64,000 nt of DNA from Paragordius varius (Eukaryota > Animalia > Nematomorpha): positions 8,370,001 to 8,434,000 of the forward strand of contig OZ176050.1 of NCBI GenBank assembly GCA_964247055.1. The letters run 5' to 3'. This document shows, piece after piece, positions 1 to 61,609 of the stretch. The position numbers were made by a program, and so were the translations under genes. Under the pieces are notes generated by a model. That model searched no databases, had not been told where the DNA came from, and saw only the letters and a list, made by a program, of their open reading frames with translations. The stretch's first letter is position 1, and the number at the start of each line of letters is the position of its first letter.

Positions 1-2486
1 TAAATATGTTTTGAGCCCAACAAACGTGCAATGATGGGTACATATGTTCTTATCTATAGATTTTTTAAAATGAGTAAAATAGTATCAGAGGTAATTTAGC
101 GGGATGATGGGAGGTGTTTTTGTCAATCTCACAAACATAAAAAAATTAATAATTATGTTAAAGCTTTGTGGTATATGGAGTTTAATTAAAAAGGCCATCG
201 GAACACCTTGGATGTAGAGCTTTTCAACTAATTGAAAAAATGATAAAAATACAAAAGTTTTATTGTGATTTAGTAATTTTATAAATCTTATCAGAATCTT
301 ACACATATTTTATCTTATAATTTAGCCAAAAAAACGTTATTTTTTTAGAAACTATTCCTAATTTTAAGTTTCTTATATTCATGAAATCATATGGTTATAA
401 AGCTTTTGCGTTAAGATAAAAGAATTATAATCAAAATAGTGATAATAGCTGTGTTTTTCGGTTTTTTGCATTTATTTCTCTTTTGTTAAATCTTGTTTTT
501 TGGATTCTAAAAGCCCATCCTGCCTTTAAACGGAGATACCACGTAATTAAACTATATTTGTATACCTAAGAGACAAATTTTTTTATAAATTCATATATTT
601 GGAATGAGAAGTTCACCCTTCAGAATTTCAAAAGGCTTTGACATCTGTAGGTAAAGCGTCTAAAAGAATTTTTCTTAAATAAAGTCAAAAGTATTTCATA
701 ACGTTTGGTATAAATTTATGTTTGGTGTATTATATTTTAAATGTACAAATATTTATAAAACTAAGCTTCGGATTGTTGATTAATATAATTTCCATAGGTA
801 CTGATAGGTTAATTACATGTTTTAAATACAATAAATTGAAGAGCTAGTGCAAAAGACTATGAAAACTGATACTATTCGTATTTTAATCGCCCGAATAAAT
901 TTTTACCATTTCTTTCAATTTTTTTAAATATGTGATTTTACATTTTGAAAGCTTTATTTTATACTTTTCTGAGTTTGTTTAAACGTAACTTACAACTTTG
1001 ATATTCTATCATTATCTAATGTTTTATTAATAAATGAAATTTATATCGCCGATTCTTTGGGAAAAAACAGCTGACTCTCCCTAAAATCAATTTTCAGTCT
1101 CTTTCCTTTATGCAACGTAACACCCAAACTTTTTTCGGATTCTGAAAGCTAAATTAATTCTCTGTTCAAATATAAATTATAAAAACTATATTTCAAAATT
1201 TGGCTTACTCTATATACATAATAAAGAGATTTGTTATCGCCGTCCGCTATGATAAAAATTACATTTTTTTGTTAGATAAATAAATAATTATTCAAACGAT
1301 ATTTATTAGGTTAACTTTATTCATATAATAATTAAAATCCTTACCTCGGGGATGCAGTTTTTTGGGTTTTTCATCTGAAATGTGAACTGGCTTAATAGTA
1401 AGTTTTCAGGGTTTTGAAAAATAACCTTAATTAATAATATGTATTATCATAAATATACATAATGTGCCCCGTTTTTTGCACATTGAAAAAGAAACTGTAG
1501 TAATTTATTGGAATTATGATTGGGCAAAATCTGTCTACTTAGAAAAACTAAAATATTATCTTTAATTTCAAAATGTTAGCCTTGTCTTACAGCGTTTACA
1601 TTAAATTATAGTCAAGATTTTTATATAACATTAGTAATATGCATCTAATGTATCACAAAAAATTATTTTGTATTATTTTAAGAATGGGCATTAACTGTTT
1701 AAAGGATTTGAACGAACCAATCTAAATACCCGTTTTAGCCCACTCTGTGATAGCACTAATTATAAAAATAGATAGATTTTATATAGATCCTATTTTAAAT
1801 CAAATAATAATTTATAATCATATGCTCTAAAAATTAAAATTTTTATTTATAATAATAAAAAGTGTTTCGTGTGCCAAATTATATTAAATATAGATATTCA
1901 ATAATTTTAATCACAAAAAAATTTCCATGGTCAAAGGAGATAACGTATGTTTGATAAATCACAATATCAATGGGCGAGGAATAAGTTATGGCAAATTATT
2001 TATTTTTTTTAAACAAATTTTTTGATGTGTCAAGGCATAATTGAATGTCATCACATTCACTTTATAATATCTATCGTGTATTATTTAAAGAGAAAAAAAA
2101 TATATTATTATGCAATATAATGGTTTTTTGGTTTAGTTTAGTTTAGTATTTTGTTTAATACATCAAGATTAAATATTAAAGAGGCGTCTTGTCTAGCTAG
2201 TGTGGTGTCAACACTAACAATCCCCCTTGTTTCGTTACAGCAAGAAGACAAAAATTAATTTAATATTTGGCTTTAAACGAAAATAAAGAAATTTCCCCCA
2301 TACAAAACATAAATATATAATAAATAAAAATTTATTGATCATTTGGGTATTTTTTTTCTGGGACAGAATATTGGATGTCAAAATTTGAGATGACTTATGT
2401 CCCTACACCAATACATGAAACAAACAAGGACTATTTAATTAAATTTAGATAAAAATTTTATTTACACAAACAATAGGTTAGGCATA

Positions 2487-2488
<2 letters not shown>

Positions 2489-2546
<58 letters not shown>
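2489..2546. repeat. (AT)n microsatellite
   Basis: Direct reading, roughly 29 units. Confidence 0.95.
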
Positions 2547-2552
<6 letters not shown>

Positions 2553-5500
2553 TGCGTGCATCGTTTTAATGATATTTTAATTTAGATGTAAAATTAAACC
2601 CTAGAAATTATTTTATGGAATGATAATAATTGTATATTATGTATAATTCAACTCTTTAAGAAAATAGTTAATCATAAGATAAGGCATAAAATTTGATTTT
2701 TCCTATAGGGGTTGTTTTGCCTAATGTATTATAGACAGATTCGCAACCAAATTGGAATTAGTATAAAAATATACTGTCAGTGAAGACCAACAATTAAATT
2801 ATTAAATTATGTTTTAATTTAAACGGATTCATTTTTTTATTATATAGTATTATTTTACAAATCCCCATTCCTTAACTATAATAAAAAATTAAATTCTAAT
2901 TTTATAAGCTAAAGCTCATGGTACTTACAGAGGAGATAATATATATTAATCATATTTCAACAAACATAACATGTGATGTAACCAACGCAACCTTTATAGC
3001 AAATAATTTTTAAAAATTGTTAAAAAGTTATGGTGAATATTACGAAATCGTTTTTTTTCAATATCTTAAAATTTTATTAAATAGATTATTTGAGAAAGTA
3101 TAAAAAACCAAAACATAACAGCCATACTCCAATTTAACGTTTTTGCTTTTTTTTTCAATATGATATAAAATTGAATAAAATATTTCTCTAAATCAAGCAA
3201 AAATAAACTTCAAAACAGTTAGTTTGGCCAGCCAGGAAAGGCAAATGGTTCTTACACACAAAACAAACGTCCATGGAATATTAATGTGCCATTTTATAAA
3301 TAAATAACTAACTAACTTATAATAATAATTTTAACATTATATATATTAATATTAATTTATATTTTACATTATTTTATAGCTAGCTAGCTAGCGAGCTATA
3401 TAATGGCAGGCAAAACGTAATTTTTTTAAATCTAATATATGACTCTTGGATCCGTCCGGACATACGCACTATATTTATCATTCCTGTATTAGAAACTTAA
3501 AAACTTTTATGATGAAAAAAAAACAAATATGTACCACATAAAAATATTTCTTAAGCGGATTAAGATACTAAATTATATGTATTGATATAAGATAGTAAGA
3601 TATTGCGGGCGCGCTTATGTTAAAACAAAACTACCCTTCTTTTAATTAATTATTAACAATTTATAATAAAATAAATTATATTTTGGTTTTTATTTAAAAT
3701 TGGATAAAGTCTTAGTATGTACTAACAAAATTATTAACTTTTATCTGAGATATTTTAACATTGTCATTTTAAATTGTTCCTCTTGCCAAAATAATGTTTT
3801 GCGTAATCGAACTTGACAGAGAAAGCTGTTGTTTGTCTAGAAAATCTAGGATCGAGGAAAATAGAGATATCTATTCAAAAAATCACAATCTTTTACATTT
3901 CAATTTTATAATTACATTTATTTAAAGATTACGATAAGGTATATTTGTCACCAGTTTTTAAAATATGAGCCACGTTGCATTTAGGCCAATAAACCAATAA
4001 CTAATTTTAAACTGCTTTTGAATAATATTTTTAAACAATATCAGCCCAAAGAAAAGTTTGATTTATCAATATTTATTATACAAAGCTCTCCTTCATAGGC
4101 ATCATAATTAATATATCATATGATTTACTTATGCGTACTTAAAATATTTATTGAGGAAATTGTTATAATAAAATGCTATTAAAATATTATATATTTTTTT
4201 CGTCCAAGTCAAAAAGTACCAAACAAATTAAATTACTATTTAATTTTTAAATTTTAATTAGTGGAAATATACAAAATAATATTTGAATATCACACTATCA
4301 TAACACTTTATAAAATAATGCCCCTTTTTATAATAATTAAAACATTTCTATCTTTTTCATAAATAAATTAAAGAAGCGGTAATGACCAGGGTTTGGCTTA
4401 TCTATTTGAATCTTTTGGCTATTTTACAAAATTTGTCATTTTAGAAATATACATCAGTTTTTTAGCTTTTGGAAGCCCAATCGCAACGTGATATTCATTG
4501 TGAGATTTATTAATAACCGAAATTTCAGCAAAATTTATTTGATATTAAAAAACTCTGTAAGTAAATATTTCTATTGGTCTCAATGTAAATGATTGAAATC
4601 CTTTTTAATTTATTAAAATTATAAAAAAAATATATTGACATTATTTATATATTAAAAATATTATTAAACGAAAAAGTATTCTGCGTTATTTCATCCGATA
4701 TGGCCTAATATAAATTCCGTGGAAAGTGAGAATTATTGTAATATCAATAAACATGAAAATTATAGTCAATATCAATTTAATTTTTTTAGTGGACGAAAAG
4801 TTCACTCAACCTTTCAAAAATACCCCACCTGTCCCAACCGACTTTATTAAACTTAAAATGTTTGGCATTTTTTGCAGTTTTTTAAAATTTCACCGTTTGA
4901 GACGAATAATCTGGGTAAAAAAATATACATATTTAAAGATTTAATATAGTTTTAATTTGGATACATTACAAATATTACTTGATGACTGTGATTTTGGTTC
5001 TTCATAACTTTTTTGATCTTTCAAAATTATACTTAATATGTTTATCATTTTCGTATTATACAATTTTACAGATAATTTACTCTTGTTTGGCTGGCTACAA
5101 ATTTGATTTTATTTTAGCCATTTCTATGATGATATATGATATTAGGATGTTATGTATTAAAAAGTAAAAATGTATAACTTTGATTCACAATATGAGTTGC
5201 AAGAAAAGTTATCCAAAAAGTTAACCATATCATTTTTAATCAAATTTTTGTATGGATATTATTCTTTGGATAAAATTAATATTATATATGTTATTATTTT
5301 TATTTTCAGTATTTTTTTAAACATTTGATTGATTAAGATGATAAAATCCAGAATAAAGCGTGTAAAATTTATGGAATACATAAATCAACCAATTTTTAAT
5401 GGAAAAAATTTGTATATTTAATTAGCCTGACTATATATTTATATAATATATTTACAATATTATCTGGGGTATCTGACCGATTATTTATGCAACAATCATG

Positions 5501-6344
5501 GATTTCGATTTAATTTATTTAAAGCAAACACAAATCCAAAATCCTGATTGTTATTAAAGAAACTTAAATTTTTTAAAGATTGAAATCAAGCCATTGACTC
5601 ACAAAACTTCATATTTTTGATGTTGACATTTTGGTTTAATAGTTTTGTTATCAAAAATTAACGTATTCCATTTGATAAATAACTGTTTAGGCATCAATTA
5701 AAATTGCCCAACTTATTTCCTTGAGTTTATGTAATATTAATTAAAAAATAAAATATTAAAGGGGCCTCTGTCAATTTTTGGATCAAAAATGGGGTTGTAC
5801 CATCAACGTTGGGAACCGGTGTGCTTTATTAGCAAAAATACAAATTTCATTTTTATAAAAAAAACTCTGTTGGTTTTATAAGGTTTTAACGGATTGTCAT
5901 TAATTTAAGACAGAAATGCTTATAATTAAAATATAAACAAAAATATTCATCGAAGCAAACAGAATTTGCAGGTGTTTTGGCGGAACTACAGGCCGCTACA
6001 GGCATTCGTAAGCTGATACGCTGTAATTTACATTTACCACTTATTAAACTTAGAGATATTTAAACATATTTCAATTTTACCAAAATTTTTAACATTAGAA
6101 TATAATGCGGCACATTTTAAACATAAGGGGTATGGATTACCAATAAAAATATTATCGATACTCTCTATTCAATATATTGAATTATCAAATATAATATTAG
6201 TTTTTACATTCCCTTAGATCTACAATGAAGCCATTTATCAAACTAATTTTTCAAAGTTATTGCTACGGATAATAGGGTTGGATATTGACTGGTTAGGCCA
6301 ATTCAGGAGTGGCTTTAAAATTATATGGTAAATTATAACAATTA

Positions 6345-6398
6345 GATAAATAAATAAATAAATAAATAAATAAATATATATATATATATATATATATT
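6345..6398. repeat. Compound (TAAA)n(TA)n microsatellite
   Basis: Direct reading. Confidence 0.9.
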
Positions 6399-8613
6399 AG
6401 TAATTTAGATAAAAATATTTCTTATAGATAATTTGTGATAGTTTGTAATAATATAAAACTACATACCGATATCAAAAAATATATCAATTTACAAATAAAA
6501 ACAATTTATCAGTAAAAACCATAAAAAATTTTAATTTAGTTAGCTGTGCGACATATTATAATATATTTTTTGAATGATTTAAAGTTAACATATAATCTTG
6601 AACAACCAAATCACTATGGCAAATTAATTCTAAATTGAGGTTCAGTGGTATAATGAAGGCATTTTGCGCTAGTTTTAATTTTAGTTTTTTTTATCTTTTA
6701 AAAGATTCTTCGGAGTTTAGGCTCTTTGGTTTTAATTGTAAATTTTTGACAGAATATTCGACAATTGTTGCTAATCATATTCTCAATAACTAACATTAAT
6801 AATGTTACAACTTTGAAAAAAAAAACCATTTTTAATTGAAACCAGAGAAGCGAACTTTTTAGTTACACGCAAATTACAAATACAATAACATTAAAAATAA
6901 TAAAATTAATATCTTATAAGGAATTTTAATTGTTTTATCAGTGTATGTTTGCATCCCCCTTTCCCTTTCTTTTTATTGCTTTATGGCAAAAGGCAAGGTA
7001 ATTTAACAACAAAAAATTCTCTAAAAATTAATTAAACTTAATTTCGCTCTCTCATTTTACATGTTATGGCTTAGTTAGGCTGTGTTAAATATTTTGCATT
7101 TTAGTGGCTGGTGTTAAGCCTATGCAATTACAAGCAATTAAAATCACAAACATATAATAATAATAATATAATTACACAAAATATATTTTTTTTAGAGAGA
7201 AATGTTATAATTATTTTATTTTATATCTTTTTCTGTACTATATCCTATTTGAGTGTTAAATTTTTATAACTTTGTTGCATGCACAACACCAAATTTTATT
7301 AAAATTTCAATTATTTAAAAATATATATAAAAATAAGGTTCAAATACCAATTTTCGGTAAACTTTATTAATGGGGTCATTAAGAAGAATCAGGCATTATA
7401 TTATTATTTTTAATCAATTTTACATTTCCTAGGGCTAGAAAGTTTTGACCCGAGTAGAATGCAAATGACTTAAAAGTTTGTAAAAACATTTAGCATTTCC
7501 CATATATAATCAATTTAGAGTTGTATGTAAAATATTTTAACGATAACAAATTTTAATGTTTTTTTAAAGAAAACGACAAAATCCATATATGAAAAGCATT
7601 TTTACATTAATTATGATTTCAGACATTAATGATGTTTATTTTGCGACACCTCAAATATGAATAACTGCAAATTTAGGGCAATATGTCAATTTTATGGAAA
7701 ATTTTTGTCATAATAAATATAAAGACAAGTATGTTTAATTTTAATTTATTGAATTTTTCTTCCATTCATTTTTTAACGTTAGGCATTTAAGTCTTGAAAT
7801 GTGAAGGAAATCTAATTAAAATGATAGGTGATAGATAGGGGCATCGAATTTTCTTACCAAGGATACTTATGATATTTAAACATGTTATACATCTGGTCAG
7901 TGGCGCTAATTATCAACATGCGAATTCTTGCCCAAAAAAACAAAAAGGGGCTATTAAAAAATGGAAAAAGACCCTGTAACGCCCCGTTCCCTCGCAACGC
8001 TCCCCGGTAAGTTAGATACTTGATATACACCTTTAAATATGATAATTAAAATAATTGCTTTAGTTGTACCAAATTGATTTTTATGATTTAGCCGATTTCG
8101 GAAACGTTTTAAACAATAGGGTAATATTTGAGAGGACTTTCTGAAAATTTTCAAAAACTTATAGACAAATCTAAGATGCAGGCCAACATTAAATTTTAAA
8201 AGACATTTTTATACATTTGGCAAAATATACATCTAGCTTCTTCCAAATAAATTAACATAGTATAGATTTGTACGAACATAAGAATATAAAAAAGCACCGT
8301 CTGATTCCAAACACCTTACTGAAATACTTTTAATATATTAATTTTTGATCCATCGCACAGTTTAATTCAATTATCAAATTATATATTAATCGACTATTAA
8401 TTCAAATATTTTTATATTAATATTAGTATGAACATATATATCCAAAACTTCAAATTAAAGACGACCTATTTACATATTCAAAACAATCTTAGCAAAACAA
8501 CATTTGTTTTAATGAAGATCATACTACACATGATAAAATAAACCACCGAAAACAAATATATATTATATATTCCTAAATGTATGATTTATTATAAAAATAT
8601 ACGCGCCATTTTT

Positions 8614-52907: not shown

Positions 52908-55262
52908 ACTGTGAGCAAAAAAGAGGATCAAAAAAATTAGACAGCTTATGACTAGTGATTTCATTTGTCGCAAAATTATAATTTGTTGACGACCTAGTTT
53001 TTTAAATGTTAAGAAAATCTCGGGCAAAAAGTGAGAATTATGGATAATTTAAAAATGATTTATATGGTTTTTATCTTTTTAGGAGATTTTTTCAATATAT
53101 AAATATAAAATCACATAAATAAGGTTTAAAATCCCAGTTTAAAATGGCGTTTTTCCTTTAACACACCTAAAAGTCAAAATTTATTATAATATATTAAAAT
53201 ATTTTTTAAATTCTTTAATAGCTGAAATGACTATTAAGAATTAACATTTATTTTATACAGTGATATACGTATCCATAAAATTAAAAAATATTGTTTTTTA
53301 TTTTTTCATTTTGTTTCTGGTTTTCTAGTGTCCAAAAATTTATACTGTTTTATTATGGAATCTTACATGAATGGGGTTATAAAAGTAGATTATTTATGCA
53401 AAATAGGATTCAAAACTAGTGGAATATCAACCGACAATTCTTACAAATTCCTGTAACAAGTTTGTAATATTTTACCGAGATATGTACGGATTTTTGGTTG
53501 ATTTTCACTACATGTAAATTTTATTTTGTATTAATTTTTATACTTATACTTCTCGCTCCTCTAAAATACCGTCATAAACCAGATGAAAATGAAAAAATAA
53601 AAGACAATATTTTTAGTTCTATTTTGATATATAAGTTTTTTATTGTAATCTTTAAAAGGATATTAAACCATAATATCTCAACTTTTATTATTATTTTATG
53701 AATTATCCTTTATTGCTTAATTTTCATTTTTGCCCGATTTCAATTTTCTCTCAATATTTCGAAAACTAGGTCGTAAACATAGAAATTTTTACGGCAAATG
53801 AATATGGTCATAAGCTATCTCATTAAAAAATATATTGTTAAATTTTTGTTTTACACATTGTATATATATATATATATATATATACATATATTTGCATAAT
53901 ACTTTATATGCAAAGGTTATAAAAGAACTTTTTGGTAAAAAAATCCAAATAGGATTTGGTAATCCACACTTAAAAATTACTGATCTTTCTTCATCGTATT
54001 TGTTATTTGTCTTTATAATTAGCTAATTAGCTATAATTAGGAAATTTCAAATATTATCTTTTTTTTCAAATTTTTTATGAGGTATGATTCTCAATTTTTT
54101 TGATAAAAAAATGTTGTAGAAACCAACATCAACAATATCTGAAAATTAATTTTTAAGATGGGCACAAACGGGACCCCTAATTCGTAAACGGATAGACGAG
54201 AAAATATATTAATCTACTTTGGAAAAAGCTTTGAAAAACATTGCCAATACAAATAAAATGGCATCGATAATATGGTAGATAATTAGAGGCCACAACAAAT
54301 TTGCACGAATCTAATAAAAATAATGAATTATATTAGATTAATTTACTTGATATTTTACAATGGTTTGGTTTAATTAGTCCAATAAAAATTGATTTTATAC
54401 GAACGAATCCTAAAAATATAAAAAAAATATTTTTTTTTAAAGACAACCATACTTTTTAAATCTTTATTATAAATATAACTGATTTCAAAGTTTGGCACAT
54501 TTGATTATTTTAAAATTTTTATTATTTATTATATAACAAAAATTAAGGTTTAAAAAGTATAGTTGTCTTTTTAAAAAATTATTTGTCTCTTTATTTTTAA
54601 GTTGTTTCCGTATAACTTCAATTTTTAGTGTATAAGTGAACCTTTGTAAGTAACTACGTTAAATTGTTCGAACGGAACTGGAAAATGCATTATTGAAAAT
54701 TAATTAATATAAAAAAATTAAACTATATGTTGTTTTCCTATAAACCCTCCGTGGCTGTATAAAAGGTATGTTTTATGAAGTAAACTTTGACACTGTGATA
54801 ACATTATTGCGACTCGACTCGCTAAACTTTAGACATCAATATTTGACATATTTAATTTAAAATTTTAGATATTTCATAATCTATAAAATATTTCATTCTA
54901 CAACAATAGCATATTCAATTTGAAATTTAATATTAATATTAAGGCTGTCGCCACTTATTATTATATTTTTATAAATGGTTAATAATCCCATAAATTTGTT
55001 TATTATTTATGACAGTAAAAAAATGATTTAATAAAAATTGCTACTTTTCCCTCGGTTCCTTAAAATTAATAATTATTGCATTTTGAATAGAAAATTATTT
55101 TATTTCTACATTATATTGCTAACAATAAGGATTTTACGGCTTAGTATAGTGAAGTACTTCCTATCGTCAATATAGAAAGATTTGTGGAAGTGTTGAGTTA
55201 GATCCTACTTTCGTGGACACAAACGCACCTATATAATTGTAAATACTCATAACTCTTTGTGA

Positions 55263-56736
55263 TTAATACATATGCAAATTTTTATATATTTTGTAATGCT
55301 ATAGTTTTTGTGAGATTTGCATTGTCTTATTTTTATATTTTTGTATTATATTATATATCCATTTGTTACTCGAAATTTTATTGTTACCAGCATGCAAATT
55401 ATGTTCACTTAAAAATAGTATATATATAGAGTACAAAAAATTCAATAAATATCTTTCAAGTTTTACGTTTTATACCTTTGTTACCTTCTTGAATCTGGTG
55501 GCCAAGCGAATCCCAACTAATCTAACAACTAATCTAACATAACGGTGGAGCTCTCACCGAGTAAACTTGGATGGTGGATATAAAGTCCAAAGTGCAACAA
55601 CCATGACAATGTCAATTACCAATATCACCAACATGTCCACCAAAATAAATATAATGATAATACCAATTATAACAATGGTAATAATTTTAATCGATTACAA
55701 CAATCAAAACCTCGGACACATTCGCGCAAGGGTTATGGGAGTATTCATGGGCCAAGCAAATGTCCCGCCTGGAAACGCAATTGCAAATGGGCAAAACCCA
55801 ACCACTTCGCTAAAATGTGTAGATCAAAAAACGCTGCTAAGAGTGTGTTCAACCGCTAGATCCATAGAAAAGCAATGCCAACCGCCAGCGCACTGAAAGC
55901 GAACGGGCTAAGAATCTGTAGCGACTCTAGAATCACGATCAAATGGCTGCAGTCACAGCATTCAACATTTGATGGTTGGCAAGTAAGATTGGCGCGCACA
56001 AGCTTTTAATAAGATTGATCTGTAAGACGTTTACCTCCCCAGGCCGATGGCTAAAGAGTCGCAACACCCTCTACAATTTCAACGAAAAGAGGATGCTTCC
56101 GTTACAAAACCGTTCAGATTCCCCACAGCGCCGATAATATTTCAGTGCGACTGGACCAGTTTAACAAGAAATGGTCCAGGATGGCGTGAGGCATAGAAAT
56201 GAAACGCGTTGACACACACAACACAGGATGTTATCTTTCAAATTATGATTCGTCGACACACACAACACATGATGTTATCTTTCAAACTATGATGTAACTT
56301 ATGCAAATATTCGTCGACAAACCCAACACATGATGTAATCTTCCAAACTATGATTCGTCGACACACAACACATGATGTTATCTTTCAAACTATGATTCGT
56401 CGACACACAACACATGTTGTTTCAAACTATGATGTTACTTATTATTCGTCGACAGACCCAACACATGATGTTATCTTTCAAACTGGTATTATTTCTCTAA
56501 GGGTGAAGTGATGATACATATGCAAATTTTAAATATATATTTTGTATGTATGCTATAGTTTTTGTGAGATTTGCATTGTCTTATTTTTATATTTTTGTAT
56601 TATATATCCATTTGTTATCGAATTTTATTGTTATATGCAAATTATGTTCACTTAAAAACAGTATATATATAGAGTAAAAAAAACCGAATAAATATCTTTC
56701 AAGTTTTACGACTTAAACTTTTGCTACCTTTTTACA
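55263..56736 (+). mobile_element. Small non-autonomous LTR element (~1.47 kb) nested in the 5' LTR of the Gypsy element
   Basis: LTRs at 55263-~55493 and 56512-56736 (3' copy TG...CA); 4-bp TSD GTGA (55259-55262 and 56737-56740); PBS-like TGGTGGCCAAGCG at 55496; PPT AAGGGTGAAG; gag knuckle remnant HGPSKCPAWKRNCKWAKPNHFAKMCRSK (~55750-55830); no pol. Confidence 0.88.
56207..56484 (+). repeat. Tandem array of ~42-60-bp units inside the nested LTR element
   Basis: About six units built on TCGTCGACACACAACACATGATGTTATCTTTCAAACTATGAT, some with short insertions. Confidence 0.9.
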
Positions 56737-59253
56737 GTGATACCCCTAGTTAATGTTGATTGTAGCTTCAAGCAAATAGTTAGTATATATTTCTTATATT
56801 GTGAGAACACAGACACATGTTTGATTTTGGTATTTATAAATGTTTTCTTTGTAAATATAACTCTACTTCTATTATTGGCGCGGCAATGAACCTGGCAAAA
56901 ATTTCTCTTGAAAGCTTTGATGAAAAGGAAAATTTTGACCTATACGTTTTATACATTCAGCGAATGCTAGCTGCAAAAAACATTAGGCAAGCGACAACAA
57001 TGCAAGACGTTATTTCTCGCTTACGCAAGAATGTCGGTCTCAAAGAAATTCGATCAATTCCTTTTCCTCGCTTGATAATACCTCCTGGACATCATTGCAG
57101 CGGGCAGGAAATATAACGAATCGAATAGGACAAATATATTCCAGGCCAGATTTTATTTCGTAAAACTTCATCGGAAAGAAAATGAAACATTTACGGAATT
57201 CTTTTTACGAGTCAAAAACGAAGCCGCAAATCCAAGCTTGACGTCGATGAAAAAATGCGCGACGCGTTCATTGCAGGCCTGGGAGTGGAAAAATTAGAAT
57301 TAGATCTGTTTTCTAGATTCCCCGACGCCATGTGGCAAAACGAAACTGCCTAAAACAAATAGTAGACATTGCTCTCAACTATCAAAAAGCACATCAACTA
57401 ACAACAATAGGCCAGATATTGCAGACTACAGCTCGGAAATACCAAAACAAGTGTCGATTCTGCGGGTTAGGTCATGCACCCGGCAGATGCCCAGCTTCGG
57501 ACAAGCAATGTTATAAGTGCCAAGGCTGGAATCACTTCCAATACTGTAAGAAGAAAAGGATTAGCAACGTAGCATGTCGAATGTGGAACCACCCCCAAGA
57601 TAACAATAATAATTAATTGTAAGCCAATACACATCATTATAGACACTGGTTCAAGTGTATCTATAATTAATTGTCAAGCGTGGGAAAAAAATTGGAGAGC
57701 CCGAGTTGAAACAAACAGGCCCAGATTTGTATAGCTATGGTGGACAAAGAATCAATTCCAAGGATAAGTGTACGCCTGGGTAAAATGATGAGATGGTGAA
57801 ACAAAATCTTTGGCGTGTATGGTTGTAAGCGGCAAGAATGCCCCAGCGATTCTTGGTTGTGGCTACAAAAATTCCCGAATGCTATAAAACAGTTGATAAA
57901 TTGTCGTAAATGTTTTAATAATAGTATATTTGAGGAAATTTCACTTGTTAATAAATTTAATTCATTTTGTTAAAAGTTAGGGTGTTTCACTGGAACCCCT
58001 ATCAAACTTTTTTTAAAAAACAATACAAAACCAAAAATTTTTAAGTGTCGCCGCATCCCGATTCCGTTAAAAGAAAAAAGCGACTCTGAAATTAAGAGAT
58101 TTTTAGAAGCGGACATAATCAAACCATTAGACCCTACGACTGAGAAACTAACCTGGGCCACCCATATTGTTTGTATAACAAAAGCGAATGGTGCCTTAAG
58201 GTTATGTGCAGATTATCGTGTTACAATAGATCCACATCTAGTAGATGACAGTCATAAAATACCGACATTTAACGAATTAGTTTCCAAAATAGGATTAGGA
58301 TAATCATTTTAGGTAATCGATTTCAAAGAGAATATCTGCAATTGCCAATAGATCAAGAAAGTCAAAAGTTACTAACAATTACCACCCCCCTAAGGTATTT
58401 ACATATAAAAGGCTTCCCTTTGGCCTAACAAGCGCCTCCTGCATTTTTCAAAGATTAATGTATAAGATTTTAGGTGACTGCCCAGGAACAGCTGTATATT
58501 TAGACGATATTTTAATAACAGGAAAAAACCGAAACGAACATAAAAGAAACTTAGAAAAGGTATGTAGGCGTCTAGACGAATCTGGCTTAAAATTAAGTAA
58601 AAGCAAAACTAAAACTTTTTCAACCGTCTGTAAACTATTTAGGATATGTTATAACAAAAAACGGCATATCACCAGCCGCCGATAAAGTTAGAGCCATACA
58701 AGACTTCCCAACACCCACTGACAAAACAACACTTAAGTTCTTCTTAGGCTTAATAAATTTTCACACACGATTCCTCCCCAAATTGCATGGAAGTTTGGCC
58801 ATATTTCACGACCTAAGCAGTTATAAAAAAACCTTAGATATGGACCATAAACCATGAGGACTGTTTTAACAGAGCCAAAAATTTAATATGTCACACTGTG
58901 AAACTACCGTTCAACCCTGAGTTACCAATAATAATCGAAATAGACGCCTCGAATAAAGACGGAGCAGTGGTACTACGGACAACACAGGAGGGCATAAATA
59001 AACCCATTGCCTACGCATCTAAAAATGGTCTAAACCCGAAGAAAATTATTCAGTGATAGAAAAGTAATCACAAGCCATACTTTTCGCTTTTGAAAAATTT
59101 AAAAATTACGAGGAAGGAGTTTGAGCTGCGTACTGATCACAAACCACTAATAAAGCTGTTTGGAAATAATCGTAAACTAGACCAAATAAATAATTCCATA
59201 TCACGTTGGATATATAAAGCTAGCGAAAATTACAATCTTCGGTACATTAAAAG

Positions 59254-59279
59254 CCACGAAAGTAGGATCTAACTTAACA
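59254..59279 (-). mobile_element. Inverted 26-bp copy of the start of the element's own LTR, embedded in pol
   Basis: The reverse complement reads TGTTAAGTTAGATCCTACTTTCGTGG, versus TGTTGAGTTAGATCCTACTTTCGTGG (5' LTR) and TGTTAAGTTAGATCCTATTTTGGTGG (3' LTR). Confidence 0.92.
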
Positions 59280-59281
59280 TC

Positions 59282-59555
59282 CCTACAATACATAGCAATA
59301 TTATAAAAGCCAGGAGTTGTCCTCAACAACATACAGGTTAACGCATGTCGTGTTTGATGTTTCTAAAATTTGCTCCAATGTTTTAATCACGTCCTTTGAA
59401 TCAACTTTGCTATGTGGCAAACCAACATGATCTATCCAACCAACATAGAATTCAGAATTGATTAGAGGTCCGGGCGGTTCTACTGCTCTCTGCTTGGCAA
59501 AAGCTTCATTTACATTGCCACCGGTTCCGAAATCAATTGTAGCAGACCCTTGTTT
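59282..59555 (-). pseudogene. Captured fragment of a glycoside hydrolase family 35 beta-galactosidase (GLB1-like)
   Basis: Translation [77 protein letters not shown], then after a frameshift TTPGFYNIA. This matches human GLB1 as recalled: [49 protein letters not shown]...VNLYMFIGGTNFAYWNGA. The nucleophile Glu codon is at 59451-59453. Confidence 0.88.
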
Positions 59556-59805
59556 TAATTGTAAATAAACGACTCGGATTACTCTCATAAGAAATCAGAG
59601 ATGATAACAAAATCATCCGAAAACACGCCGATCAACTGAGACCAAGAGAAGGAAGCGAAAAATAATGGGAAAGACAACTTCATTCGAAGACTCCACCATG
59701 GCATGACCTATATGTCAGGTGCCCTACTGCCACGATCGAAGCCACGACATTACCTCAGCCCCAACCCTCGAAATCCATCATTGAGTCACCATCCCAATAA
59801 CACCC

Positions 59806-59885
59806 ACCATAGCACCTACCACTGGCATTCACACAGCACCTACCACTGACACTCACACAGCACCTACCACTGACACTCTCACAGA
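59806..59885 (+). repeat. 24-bp tandem repeat (about 3 units) in the pol 3' tail
   Basis: CACAGCACCTACCACTGACACTCA-like units. Confidence 0.85.
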
Positions 59886-60026
59886 ACGGCGATACCCTAC
59901 ACGAATCCGACACCCACCAGATAAATATCAAGGACAGGGAAAAAGTGATGTTAAGTTAGATCCTATTTTGGTGGACACAAACGCACCTATATAATTGTAA
60001 ACACTTATAACTCTTTGTGATACACC

Positions 60027-61366
60027 TAGGGTTGTGATTTTGACCCCCTTTTTTCGAAAAAGGAGGTCCGACCTAGGTCATACCATATGTTATTGCCAAT
60101 GATAAATAACTACATACATAAATACTTGATTAAAATACATAGAAAAGGTTTTTACATAAAGTATATATTTTTTTTAAATTATACTTCCTATCCTGATAAT
60201 GTAAATTTCTACAATTGACGATCTTTGGAATCATACATAAAGACTTATAGAAAGTTTCAAATCACAGAAAGCTAAGACTAACAAGAAAATATGGATTTAT
60301 TGAACCTATTTATGCTCTAATTATTTAGATTGTGTAAAAACGAGTCTTGTCCATGAACTTAAAGTTAACAAAAAAAATTTTATATTGGAAATTTCTTATA
60401 CGATTTATTAGAATATATAATCGTGCTCACTACATTTAAAATTACAATAATCTTAAGTTTAATATATTCTTTCATCAAATTATTTAAAATATGACATTGG
60501 CATTTATATATTGGATATATTAATCAAATTTTCAGCAGCCTTCATGTTCGCTGCGGTCACAATGGCATTAATTATTTTAACGAATATCTTTTATTAGTTT
60601 CATTATGTTATAGATACATTCAGTCTTACTATGATAAGATGTGTCAATAGTAAAAAAATAATTTTATATCCTTGGCCAATAAATAATATTAATTTGCTTC
60701 CTACGAATATTGGTAAAGGGATCGACGATTAATGAAATATTATTTTTACATATTCCAATAACTTCTATTTTTATATTTTCATAACACAAATCTAGAAATT
60801 CATTGATCTGTTTTTTATTTGGAATAGCATAATTAGGTTTAAACTATGAATGAAACTTCGTAAATGTTTATTTTCAACTATGTTAAGAGTTGAGGATATA
60901 AAAATAAATTTTGCTAAATGTTTGGCTAATTTCTCTTAAAAACAAAAATTTTTAATCCTAAACTTAAGAAATTAAATAATTAGCTTGCTTTCGACCATCA
61001 CCCTCTGTCATATAATTTATTTCATGAACTTCTTTTAGATATTTCTTCATTCGGTTTTTATTTAAATATATAAATATATATATAGTGTAATTGCATTTCT
61101 TGCATGTAACTTGATTTTTTGGTCTAAAAATTTCCAAGGTTAATTTCATTATGATATAGGAAGTAAAGAAAAGATGTGTATCATATGATATTTAAAACAA
61201 AATAATACATATATAGATAATATAAGGTTTTGTTTTGCTAAAAATTGTAAAATTAAAAAAATAAAAAATTAAAAAAAATTGACCTAGGTCATTTTTTTTC
61301 GTGGTCATGACCATAGTCATGACCTAGGTCATGACCCTAGGTCAATGACTAATGGGCACAACCCTA
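60027..61366 (-). mobile_element. Decayed, deleted hAT (Ac-type) transposon nested in the 3' LTR
   Basis: Perfect TIRs TAGGGTTGTG and CACAACCCTA; perfect 8-bp TSD GATACACC (60019-60026 and 61367-61374). Minus-strand transposase remnants: BED-finger-like VTCKKC...MKKYLKEVHEI, LAKFIF...NIVENKHLRSF, IVDPFTNIR (DGWTN-like), TIDTS, AIVTAANMKAA and CHILNNLMKE. Confidence 0.92.
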
Positions 61367-61609
61367 GATACACCTAGTTAATGTTAATTGTAGCTTCAAG
61401 CAAAATAGTTAGTACAGACACATGTTTGATTTATTTAATAAATGTTTTCTTTGTGATATAAATCTACTTGTATTAGGAATAAAAGCTATATAAATCCATT
61501 TTATTATTATACCCAATTAATGTATTTTCAAAACCAAGTATAAAATTTATATAATTTTGATGTCTTAAAAAATTATTTATCAATATATAGATATTTCTAA
61601 AAGTAATTT

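What the first reader, a model, noticed from the sequence alone, without database searches (positions are those of the whole stretch)
59254..59590. Retrotransposon whose integrase core is replaced by an inverted host beta-galactosidase (GH35) fragment fused to its own LTR start
Seen: pol reads ...SRWIYKASENYNLRYIK and then switches to an inverted cassette of 26 bp of LTR start (59254-59279) plus ~275 bp of GH35-like coding sequence (59282-~59555). It resumes in the integrase C-terminal tail (RLGLLS*EIRDD...HADQLR). The LTR piece agrees with the majority base at all three positions where the two LTRs differ in that stretch, so it looks ancestral. It is preceded by GA, the same dinucleotide found between the PPT and the 3' LTR. 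Established: the NSEFYxGW Glu is the GH35 catalytic nucleophile (human GLB1 E268). Inference: a host sequence joined to an LTR end was captured during reverse transcription or repair, either as a flank-LTR junction from a sibling copy inserted in a GH35 gene or as mRNA/cDNA joined to an unprocessed U3 end. If the element was transcribed, it produced RNA antisense to a host lysosomal-type enzyme gene.
Basis: partly seen in the sequence, partly recalled or inferred. Interest (0 to 1): 0.8.

Follow-up and report, generated by a model that had tools for sequence, protein, structure and literature searches.

The report
Dead retrotransposon carrying inverted spliced beta-galactosidase fragment
One decayed gypsy-type jumping gene has had its integrase replaced by a backwards, intron-free piece of the host's own beta-galactosidase message joined to the first bases of the element's own LTR; this is a neat fossil of a reverse-transcriptase copying accident of a known kind, and nothing shows that it does anything.

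Summary
The window holds a Ty3/gypsy copy at 55191-61475 with a target-site duplication of GGAAG/GGAAT. About 1,040 bp that in at least 9 sibling copies encode the integrase zinc-binding domain and catalytic core are replaced by 295-303 bp.

The replacement is inverted. It consists of the first 18-26 nt of the LTR, then about 273 nt of GH35 beta-galactosidase sequence, then a 4-nt filler.

New here:
- The GH35 piece aligns colinearly with three consecutive exons of the host's own gene on another contig. Its 810- and 611-nt introns are missing, so it came from spliced mRNA.
- The pol/LTR junction shares 8 nt (CCACGAAA; chance about 2e-4).
- The LTR/GH35 junction lies exactly at the LTR terminus and shares GATG.
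- The fragment's own substitutions are spread evenly over codon positions and it has frameshifts, so it decays neutrally.
- Both junctions are unique in the assembly. Unitigs from other samples and from another organism label support them.

Best reading: a variant of LTR-mediated retroposition (Tan et al. 2016). It is unusual in being inverted and in ending on an LTR terminus. There is no evidence of function.

The scan has already noted other gypsy copies carrying spliced host fragments (Argonaute, RPB1, RPS25) on other DNA of this genome.

The parts
55186..55190 (+). Left copy of the element's target-site duplication (GGAAG)
   Evidence: Compared with GGAAT at 61476-61480 directly after the 3' LTR.
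55191..56874 (+). 5' LTR. The true LTR is about 210 bp (55191-55263 plus 56742-56874). It is interrupted by a 1,473-bp nested insertion at 55264-56736 that is flanked by the duplication GTGAT.
   Evidence: Alignment with the 208-210-bp LTRs of sibling copies L050 and L051. Break points read. Terminal 225-bp direct repeats of the insert.
56875..59253 (+). Decayed internal region: PBS-like TGGCGCGG at 56876, gag zinc knuckle, protease, reverse transcriptase and RNase H
   Evidence: Pfam hits on ORF pieces: RVT_1 at 58458-58685, RT_RNaseH at 58898-59056 and 59090-59272. Asp_protease_2 is found in sibling L051. Many stops.
59254..59261 (.). Left junction microhomology CCACGAAA, shared by pol (as in sibling copies) and by the reverse complement of LTR nt 19-26
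   Evidence: Ten sibling loci continue ...CCACGAAA (or TCACGAAA/TCATGAAA in three) then ACATTGCAG..., whereas the window continues into the inverted LTR. Simulated chance of 8 or more shared nt is 2.4e-4.
59262..59279 (-). Inverted LTR (U3) nt 1-18, ending exactly on the LTR's terminal TG
   Evidence: (I13, I19).
59278..59422 (-). GH35 exon-c-derived segment. Its last 4 nt, GATG (59278-59281), overlap the PPT-flank GA plus the LTR's TG. It stops 3 nt short of the host exon's 3' end. It carries a 3-bp deletion near 59296 and a 5-bp deletion after 59320.
   Evidence: Alignments to host locus L048 and to its spliced exons.
59423..59521 (-). GH35 exon-b-derived segment (the complete 99-nt exon, containing the NSEFY nucleophile motif)
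   Evidence: The host introns of 611 and 810 nt (GT..AG) on either side are absent.
59522..59552 (-). GH35 exon-a-derived segment (the last 31-33 nt of that exon's 3' part)
59553..59556 (.). Four-nucleotide filler TTTT at the right junction, matching neither the host exon nor the sibling elements
59557..59948 (+). Integrase C-terminal tail, a 24-nt x3 tandem repeat (59808-59887), and the PPT (GGACAGGGAAAAAG) followed by TGA
   Evidence: Matches 35 or more sibling copies from 59557 on. Repeat D9. PPT read.
59949..61475 (+). 3' LTR (59949-60026 plus 61375-61475). It is interrupted by a 1,340-bp hAT-like insertion at 60027-61366 with TIR TAGGGTTGTG and an 8-bp duplication GATACACC.
   Evidence: LTR-LTR divergence is 13 of 178 sites, 7.3%.
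61476..61480 (+). Right copy of the target-site duplication (GGAAT)

Best explanation
This is a defective copy of a resident Ty3/gypsy family, made by a reverse-transcription accident of the LTR-mediated retroposition type.

Shown: a spliced host GH35 (GLB1-like) mRNA was reverse-transcribed and became joined to element sequence. The resulting 295-303-bp cassette replaced about 1,040 bp that encode the integrase zinc-binding domain and catalytic core.

Inferred order of events inside a virus-like particle:
1. A growing DNA strand left pol at CCACGAAA by pairing with the same 8 nt in the opposite-sense LTR start.
2. It ran to the physical end of that template, the U3 terminus (a strong-stop or linear-cDNA end).
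3. From there it jumped onto a co-packaged GH35 mRNA at GAUG and copied about 273 nt across two exon-exon junctions.
4. It added four untemplated bases and returned to the element in the integrase tail.

The chimeric cDNA kept both LTRs. It was integrated by integrase supplied in trans, giving a 4-5-bp target duplication.

Since then the copy has decayed neutrally and has acquired two nested transposon insertions. It has no demonstrated function. Its sense transcript would have been antisense to the host gene over about 273 nt.
For: - Intron loss. The fragment is colinear with three consecutive exons of the host gene at G000:C2:10.558-10.562 Mb. Introns of 810 and 611 nt with GT..AG ends are missing. 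The paralog on C5 has introns at the same places.
- Replacement rather than insertion. Sibling copies have 1,034-1,052 bp between window positions 59261 and 59557. That stretch carries Integrase_H2C2 and rve.
- Junctions. There are 8 nt of microhomology at the left junction (P about 2.4e-4), 4 nt (GATG) at the LTR/GH35 junction (P about 0.025), and a 4-nt filler at the right junction.
- Agreement with the published signature. Tan et al. 2016 (PMC5131818) report part of the ORFs replaced, a median of 6 bp microsimilarity, and 2-26 bp of de novo sequence at some junctions.
- The LTR piece ends exactly on the LTR terminus. An end-of-template jump predicts this; a random switch does not.
- Both LTRs and a target duplication are present.
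- Native family. There are 40 or more siblings at 77-90% identity.
- Neutral decay. Fragment-specific changes are 19 in 263 sites, split 5/7/7 over codon positions. Host-gene-specific changes are 11, of which 10 are at third positions. The fragment also has 5-bp and 3-bp deletions.
- Both junction sequences are unique in the 110.6-Mb assembly.
- Independent read support. Exact 145-nt unitigs covering 59252-59396 occur in two samples. Contigs bridging the right junction occur in a second sample and in another organism label.
Against: - The inverted orientation is not what the simple minus-strand template-switch model gives. It needs at least one switch to a template of the same polarity, which is inferred and not shown.
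- The same structure could arise after integration by break repair, or from a sibling's flank.
- The fragment's own branch (7.2%) is about twice the per-LTR divergence (3.7%; one-sided P about 0.04 by my arithmetic). The capture may therefore predate this insertion.
- Variant contigs carry the same right junction but have 206 nt on the left that do not match the window (organism C). This hints that another, possibly longer, version of the cassette exists. In that case the LTR-terminus junction could be secondary.
- The left junction itself is not bridged by 31 nt on each side in any listed unitig.
Confidence: 0.6

Rival explanations
1. Post-integration break repair. An already integrated, complete copy suffered a double-strand break in the integrase region. 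The break was patched by end joining that captured a free chimeric cDNA (LTR-start cDNA that had switched onto GH35 mRNA). About 1 kb was lost and microhomology was used at one end.
For: Random orientation of a captured fragment would explain the inversion without special pleading. An 8-nt microhomology on one side and a 4-nt filler on the other are typical of end joining. Capture of retrotransposon cDNA at yeast chromosome breaks is established (Teng et al. 1996 and Moore & Haber 1996, from my own knowledge; not read here).
Against: It still needs an RT-made chimeric cDNA whose switch point falls exactly on the LTR terminus. The fragment's own divergence (7.2%) is not smaller than the per-LTR divergence (3.7%), as a later event would predict. 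The variant contigs show that the right junction is shared by diverged versions, so the event is old.
Confidence: 0.2
2. Sibling-flank origin. A sibling element had integrated into a GH35 exon (of the gene or of a retrocopy). A spliced read-through or chimeric transcript, or that DNA locus itself, then served as template. On this reading the GH35/LTR junction is an integrase-made insertion junction copied into this element.
For: The junction is exactly at the LTR's terminal TG, as at any integration site. The host sequence ...GA|TG... fits a strand transfer after GA.
Against: No such locus exists in the assembly. The junction 30-mer occurs once. The only GH35 DNA matches are intron-containing loci on C2 and C5. 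The host exon c carries no LTR. The inversion still needs extra steps.
Confidence: 0.1
3. Assembly chimera or contamination, or a foreign (horizontally transferred) GH35 fragment.
For: Nothing specific. No listed unitig bridges the left junction with 31 or more nt on both sides.
Against: Exact unitigs cover 59252-59396 in two samples. Contigs bridge 59556/59557 in sample S2 and in organism C. The nearest relatives are the host's own paralogs, with the same exon boundaries. The element's closest siblings, at 90% identity, fit a resident family.
Confidence: 0.03
4. Functional antisense cargo. The element, or a small-RNA cluster containing it, yields antisense, si- or piRNAs that regulate the host GLB1-like gene.
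For: The orientation is antisense to the element's own transcription. Exact matches to the host mRNA of up to 45 nt persist. The idea that captured gene fragments provoke cross-silencing is published for maize (bioRxiv 10.1101/777037, abstract seen).
Against: There is a single copy. Substitutions are neutral in pattern and there are three indels. The element is riddled with stops and both LTRs are interrupted by nested insertions. No RNA run holds the stretch.
Confidence: 0.05

Closest known systems
LTR-mediated retroposition chimeras in animals (Tan et al. 2016, Genome Res 26:1663, PMC5131818)
   Same: An intron-free partial copy of a host mRNA lies inside an LTR retrotransposon and replaces part of its ORFs rather than interrupting them. 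Junctions show microsimilarity or a short de novo filler. Both LTRs are kept. More than two switches are possible.
   Different: Here the cargo is inverted relative to the element and is fused to the inverted first 18-26 nt of the LTR, with the junction exactly on the LTR terminus. The paper's text contains no occurrence of 'orientation' or 'inverted', and its model gives co-oriented cargo. Here the copy is old and decayed, not polymorphic.
Bs1 of maize and the rice retrocopies inside LTR elements; Ty1-mediated chimeric retrosequences in yeast (as cited in PMC5131818)
   Same: An LTR element carries pieces of cellular genes acquired through RNA.
   Different: Those are described as transduced or co-oriented gene pieces and can be propagated. 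No LTR-terminus junction is reported in what I read.
Retroviral 'deletion with insertion' replication errors and non-homologous RT recombination (Pathak & Temin 1990; Zhang & Temin 1993). Cited from my own knowledge, not read here.
   Same: A deletion is filled with sequence copied from another template after a microhomology-guided switch within a single replication cycle.
   Different: Those were seen in vector assays and were mostly short. Here it is a natural genomic fossil with a spliced host mRNA as one of the templates.
LINE-type processed pseudogene
   Same: An intron-free copy of a host mRNA.
   Different: There is no poly(A) and no target duplication around the cassette. Only an internal part of the mRNA (three exons) is present. 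It replaces 1 kb instead of inserting.

Membership tests
Ty3/gypsy LTR retrotransposon | Two LTRs in direct orientation flanked by a short target-site duplication, with a PBS after the 5' LTR and a PPT before the 3' LTR | tested here: met
   LTRs are 92.7% identical over 178 comparable sites. Target duplication GGAAG/GGAAT, PBS-like TGGCGCGG and a purine tract before the 3' LTR.
Ty3/gypsy LTR retrotransposon | Domain order protease - RT - RNase H - integrase | tested here: met
   The window has RVT_1 and then RT_RNaseH. Siblings L050 and L051 have Asp_protease_2 upstream and Integrase_H2C2 plus rve downstream of RNase H. The window copy itself lacks the integrase domains.
LTR-mediated retroposition chimera | The cargo is an intron-free copy of a host gene that has introns | tested here: met
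   Colinear alignment across two exon-exon junctions. Host introns of 810 and 611 nt are absent.
LTR-mediated retroposition chimera | The cargo replaces part of the element's internal ORFs (no simple insertion) and both LTRs are kept | tested here: met
   1,034-1,052 bp present in siblings are missing. Both LTRs and the target duplication are present.
LTR-mediated retroposition chimera | Microsimilarity (or a short de novo filler) at the fusion points | tested here: met
   8 nt, 4 nt and a 4-nt filler. Chance of 8 or more nt is 2.4e-4.
LTR-mediated retroposition chimera | Cargo co-oriented with the element, as the minus-strand double-switch model predicts | tested here: not met
   The GH35 sense strand is on the window's minus strand and the element is on the plus strand.
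Glycoside hydrolase family 35 (GLB1-like beta-galactosidase) | Significant match to the family profile, including the nucleophile motif | tested here: met
   PF01301 at 39.3 bits against a cut-off of 27, covering profile positions 199-269 of 319. Human GLB1 at E 1.7e-19, with NSE aligned to E268.
Glycoside hydrolase family 35 (GLB1-like beta-galactosidase) | A complete catalytic domain able to act as an enzyme | tested here: not met
   Only about 90 codons out of a domain of 319 profile positions are present, with a frameshift. It is a fragment, not a gene.
LINE-mediated processed pseudogene | A 3' poly(A) tail and flanking target-site duplication | tested here: not met
   There is no A/T tract at the mRNA-3' side, which is joined to the LTR terminus. 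There is no duplication around the cassette.

The most novel reading that the evidence does not exclude
The junction exactly on the LTR terminus may record a specific and recurrent route in this animal's gypsy elements. In this route reverse transcriptase, on reaching a strong-stop or linear-cDNA end, jumps onto packaged cellular mRNAs. This would make inverted cargo that is transcribed antisense to the parent genes and feeds small-RNA silencing of host genes. The many other captured mRNA fragments noted in this genome would then be part of one process that has regulatory consequences.
Probability: 0.07. Interest if true: 0.65.

Novelty: new variant of a known kind. Interest (0 to 1): 0.4.

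Why it matters
This copy is a clean natural record of how an LTR-retrotransposon reverse transcriptase shuffles host exons. All three junctions are readable, the spliced origin is proven against the host's own gene, and one junction falls on a natural template end. It extends LTR-mediated retroposition in animals to inverted cargo. That matters because inverted cargo is transcribed antisense to the parent gene. It is also one more data point for a genome that seems unusually rich in such captures. It does not reveal a new system, and the copy itself is dead.

Tried and rejected
- Word-index protein search with the 95-aa ORF found nothing. Given the length window this says nothing about relatives.
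- I looked for a second copy of the cassette in the assembly with a DNA search and with two junction patterns allowing 3 mismatches. Only the window's own copy was found.
- I first read the excess of third-position differences to the C2 gene (23 of 32) as a sign of a missing or foreign source gene. I rejected this after the three-way comparison with the C5 paralog. That comparison puts the third-position changes on the functional C2 branch and shows even, neutral-type changes on the fragment branch.
- I first took the LTRs for 1.5-1.7 kb. I rejected this because siblings have LTRs of about 210 bp and the extra DNA is two unrelated nested insertions.
- Autointegration into pol is rejected. The LTR terminus is joined to GH35, not to pol.
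- Polymerase-theta-type snap-back synthesis alone is rejected. It could copy the nearby LTR start but cannot supply 273 nt of spliced host sequence.
- A second literature search for inverted RT captures gave no directly comparable case.
- The neighbouring 'gypsy with inverted pol' noted by the scan is a different family, with only 67-70% identity over short stretches. I did not pursue it.
- The organism was not identified.

Full report
**What is there.** The window is G000:C1:8370001-8434000 of a 110.6-Mb assembly in 44 contigs. Around the finding lies one LTR retrotransposon.

- Its LTRs start at 55191 and 59949 (family D7).
- Sibling copies elsewhere in the genome have LTRs of only about 210 bp.
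- The apparent 1.5-1.7-kb LTRs of the window copy come from two unrelated nested insertions:
  - a 1,473-bp element with 225-bp terminal direct repeats and a GTGAT duplication in the 5' LTR (55264-56736);
  - a 1,340-bp hAT-like element (TIR TAGGGTTGTG, 8-bp duplication GATACACC) in the 3' LTR (60027-61366).
- The host element is bounded by GGAAG and GGAAT.
- It has a PBS-like TGGCGCGG and a purine tract followed by TGA before the 3' LTR.
- It carries decayed protease, RT and RNase H sequence.
- Siblings add Integrase_H2C2 and rve after RNase H, so the family is Ty3/gypsy in organisation.
- At least 40 sibling copies exist, at 77-90% identity.

- Pol stops being pol at 59253/59261.
- 59254-59279 is the exact reverse complement of LTR nt 1-26. 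There are 3 matches in the window, at the two LTR starts and here, against none in 100 shuffles.
- The minus-strand ORF 59301-59588 is GH35: Pfam PF01301 at E 7.9e-10 and 39.3 bits, cut-off 27.
- Its best solved relatives are human beta-galactosidase (3THC and 3WEZ series) at E 1.7e-19. NSEFY aligns so that the Glu falls on residue 268 of the full-length-numbered chain. That this Glu is the nucleophile is my own knowledge of the GLB1 structure papers.
- From 59557 the sequence again matches 35 or more siblings.
- In nine siblings, 1,034-1,052 bp lie between the points matching 59261 and 59557 (one further copy has an internal deletion). In the window 295 bp lie there.
- The missing stretch carries the zinc-binding domain and the DDE core.

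**What the tools add, 1: the cargo is spliced host mRNA.** The fragment's only DNA relatives in the genome are two GH35 loci, C2:10.558-10.562 Mb and C5:12.80 Mb.

- Against the C2 gene it matches in three blocks that lie 0.6 and 0.8 kb apart in the gene but are contiguous in the fragment.
- Reading the gene shows three exons with GT..AG introns of 810 and 611 nt.
- The fragment aligns colinearly to the spliced exons across both exon-exon junctions: 275 aligned sites, 88% identity.
- In window coordinates:
  - exon c gives 59278/80-59422;
  - exon b, complete at 99 nt, gives 59423-59521;
  - the end of exon a gives 59522-59552.
- GH35 homology continues through the ORF's stop. A 5-bp deletion after 59320 and a 3-bp deletion near 59296 shift the frame.
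- The cargo ends at GATG, 3 nt before the host exon's 3' end.
- There is no poly(A).

**What the tools add, 2: the junctions.**

- *Left.* Siblings read ...AAAAG CCACGAAA ACATTGCAG... and the inverted LTR reads ...GT CCACGAAA GTAGGATC.... The window reads pol, then CCACGAAA, then LTR. In a simulation with a sibling's internal region and LTR, 8 or more shared nt occur at 2.4e-4 of random junctions. Only 59262-59279 (18 nt) is therefore unambiguously LTR.
- *Middle.* The LTR piece ends exactly on the terminal TG. The four bases GATG are common to the host exon (...ATAGATGAAG) and to the element's PPT-flank plus LTR (...AGTGATGTT). Chance of 4 or more shared nt is 0.025.
- *Right.* After ...GACCCTTG (host: GACCCCTG) come TTTT and then the integrase tail. 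The four T match neither parent.

**What the tools add, 3: history.**

- The two LTRs differ at 13 of 178 comparable sites, 7.3%.
- The C5 paralog is a pseudogene, with an in-frame TAG and two 2-bp insertions in exon c. I used it for a three-way comparison over 263 sites:

| Lineage | Specific changes | Codon positions 1/2/3 | Reading |
|---|---|---|---|
| C2 gene | 11 | 1/0/10 | a gene under purifying selection |
| Fragment | 19 | 5/7/7 | neutral decay |
| C5 pseudogene | 14 | 5/1/8 | not interpreted |

- This removes my first suspicion that the third-position excess against C2 (23 of 32) pointed to a missing or foreign donor.
- The fragment's own branch (7.2%) is about twice the per-LTR branch (3.7%). 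With these counts that is marginal (about P 0.04 one-sided, my arithmetic). It leaves open that the capture is somewhat older than this insertion.
- The closest siblings, at 90% identity, fit a resident family of that age.

**Is it an artefact?**

- Both junction sequences occur once in the assembly, even with 3 mismatches allowed.
- Of public runs, six hold part of the stretch. All are Logan contigs of unknown library type, so nothing can be said about expression.
- Two samples of the same species label each give a 145-nt unitig identical to 59252-59396. This crosses the LTR/GH35 junction with 28 nt on the LTR side, just under the tool's 31-nt rule.
- A 183-nt contig in sample S2 (59451-59633, 11 differences) bridges the right junction. 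So does a 553-nt contig from another organism label (59293-59634, 17 differences).
- These variant contigs carry host-like states where the window copy is derived: the 5 bp TCCGC, G at 59494 and C at 59550. They also have changes of their own.
- They are therefore diverged descendants of the same capture, either allelic/orthologous or a second locus that is not in the assembly.
- The 206 nt of the organism-C contig to the left of 59293 do not match the window stretch. I could not read them. This is the main unexplained point.

**Mechanism.**

- *Shown:* RNA origin of the cargo, replacement of the integrase, microhomology at two junctions and filler at the third, an LTR-terminus junction, intact element ends with a target duplication, and neutral decay.
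- This is the published signature of LTR-mediated retroposition (PMC5131818): part of the ORFs replaced, a median of 6 bp microsimilarity, de novo bases at some junctions, more than two switches possible, both LTRs needed for integration.
- *Different here:* the cargo and an LTR tip are inverted. The paper's text does not deal with orientation.
- *My inference:* a growing strand switched at CCACGAAA onto a template of its own polarity at the LTR start. It ran off the physical end of that template, a strong-stop or linear-cDNA terminus, which is why the junction is exactly at the LTR end. It then jumped to a packaged spliced GH35 mRNA at GAUG, copied about 273 nt, added four bases and returned to the element.
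- Integrase for the final insertion must then have come in trans.
- Rivals that give the same sequence:
  - break repair of an integrated copy that captured a chimeric cDNA (the orientation then comes for free);
  - copying of a sibling's integration junction in a GH35 exon (no such locus is in the assembly).
- I put about 0.6 on the single-cycle reading, 0.2 on break repair and 0.1 on the sibling flank.

**Function.** None is indicated. The element is full of stops, both LTRs are interrupted, and the cargo decays neutrally. The element's sense transcript would have been antisense to the host gene, and exact matches of up to 45 nt to the C2 mRNA remain. Nothing tests whether that ever mattered.

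**Context from the scan (leads, not evidence).** Other notes on this genome describe gypsy copies with intron-free Argonaute, RPB1 and RPS25 pieces. Another describes a gypsy with an inverted piece of its own pol 26 kb beyond the window. I only checked that the latter is a different family with a 153-bp inverted duplication.

**Verdict.** It is a new structural variant of a known process. It is of moderate interest as a mechanistic fossil and has no demonstrated biological role.

Noticed in passing
window 55264-56736 and 60027-61366: Both LTRs of the element are interrupted by unrelated nested insertions whose target duplications overlap in LTR coordinates (GTGAT at LTR nt 69-73; GATACACC at nt 71-78). 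The first is a 1.47-kb element with 225-bp terminal direct repeats (55266-55490 / 56514-56733, 87% identical) and internal 37-61-nt tandem repeats at 56207-56507. The second is a 1.34-kb hAT-like non-autonomous element with perfect 10-bp TIRs. This may be coincidence or a preferred target site.
   Followed up: partly
window 59293-59634 (runs X3 and X6): Contigs from a second sample and from another organism label carry the same GH35/integrase-tail junction. They are about 5% diverged and keep host-like states, including the 5 bp that are deleted in the window copy. The organism-C contig has 206 further nt on the left that do not match the window. This version is absent from the assembly.
   Followed up: partly
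L049 (G000:C5:12798500-12805500), about 2482-3816 on the minus strand: A second GH35 locus, 89% identical to the C2 gene over these exons and with introns at the same positions. It is a pseudogene, with an in-frame TAG in exon b and two 2-bp insertions in exon c. Another decayed GH35 N-terminal piece lies nearby at C5:12811647-12811781.
   Followed up: partly
window 59808-59887: A 24-nt unit is repeated three times in the integrase-tail / pre-PPT region of the element (family D9). Sibling alignments drop to 76-79% identity across this part.
   Followed up: no
L056 (G000:C1:8454000-8463999) 3005-6936: A young gypsy element of a different family has LTRs that are 99% identical (3005-3343 / 6598-6936). 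It has a 153-bp inverted duplication (5923-6075 against 6435-6587, 98.7%) abutting its 3' LTR. This is the case the scan noted as 'gag replaced by inverted pol'.
   Followed up: partly
L050 (G000:C1:5289000-5298500) 4179-7062: This sibling copy of the same family lacks gag, protease and most of RT. Its 5' LTR at 4179-4387 is followed almost directly by sequence matching window 58231 onward. Large internal deletions are therefore common in this family.
   Followed up: no
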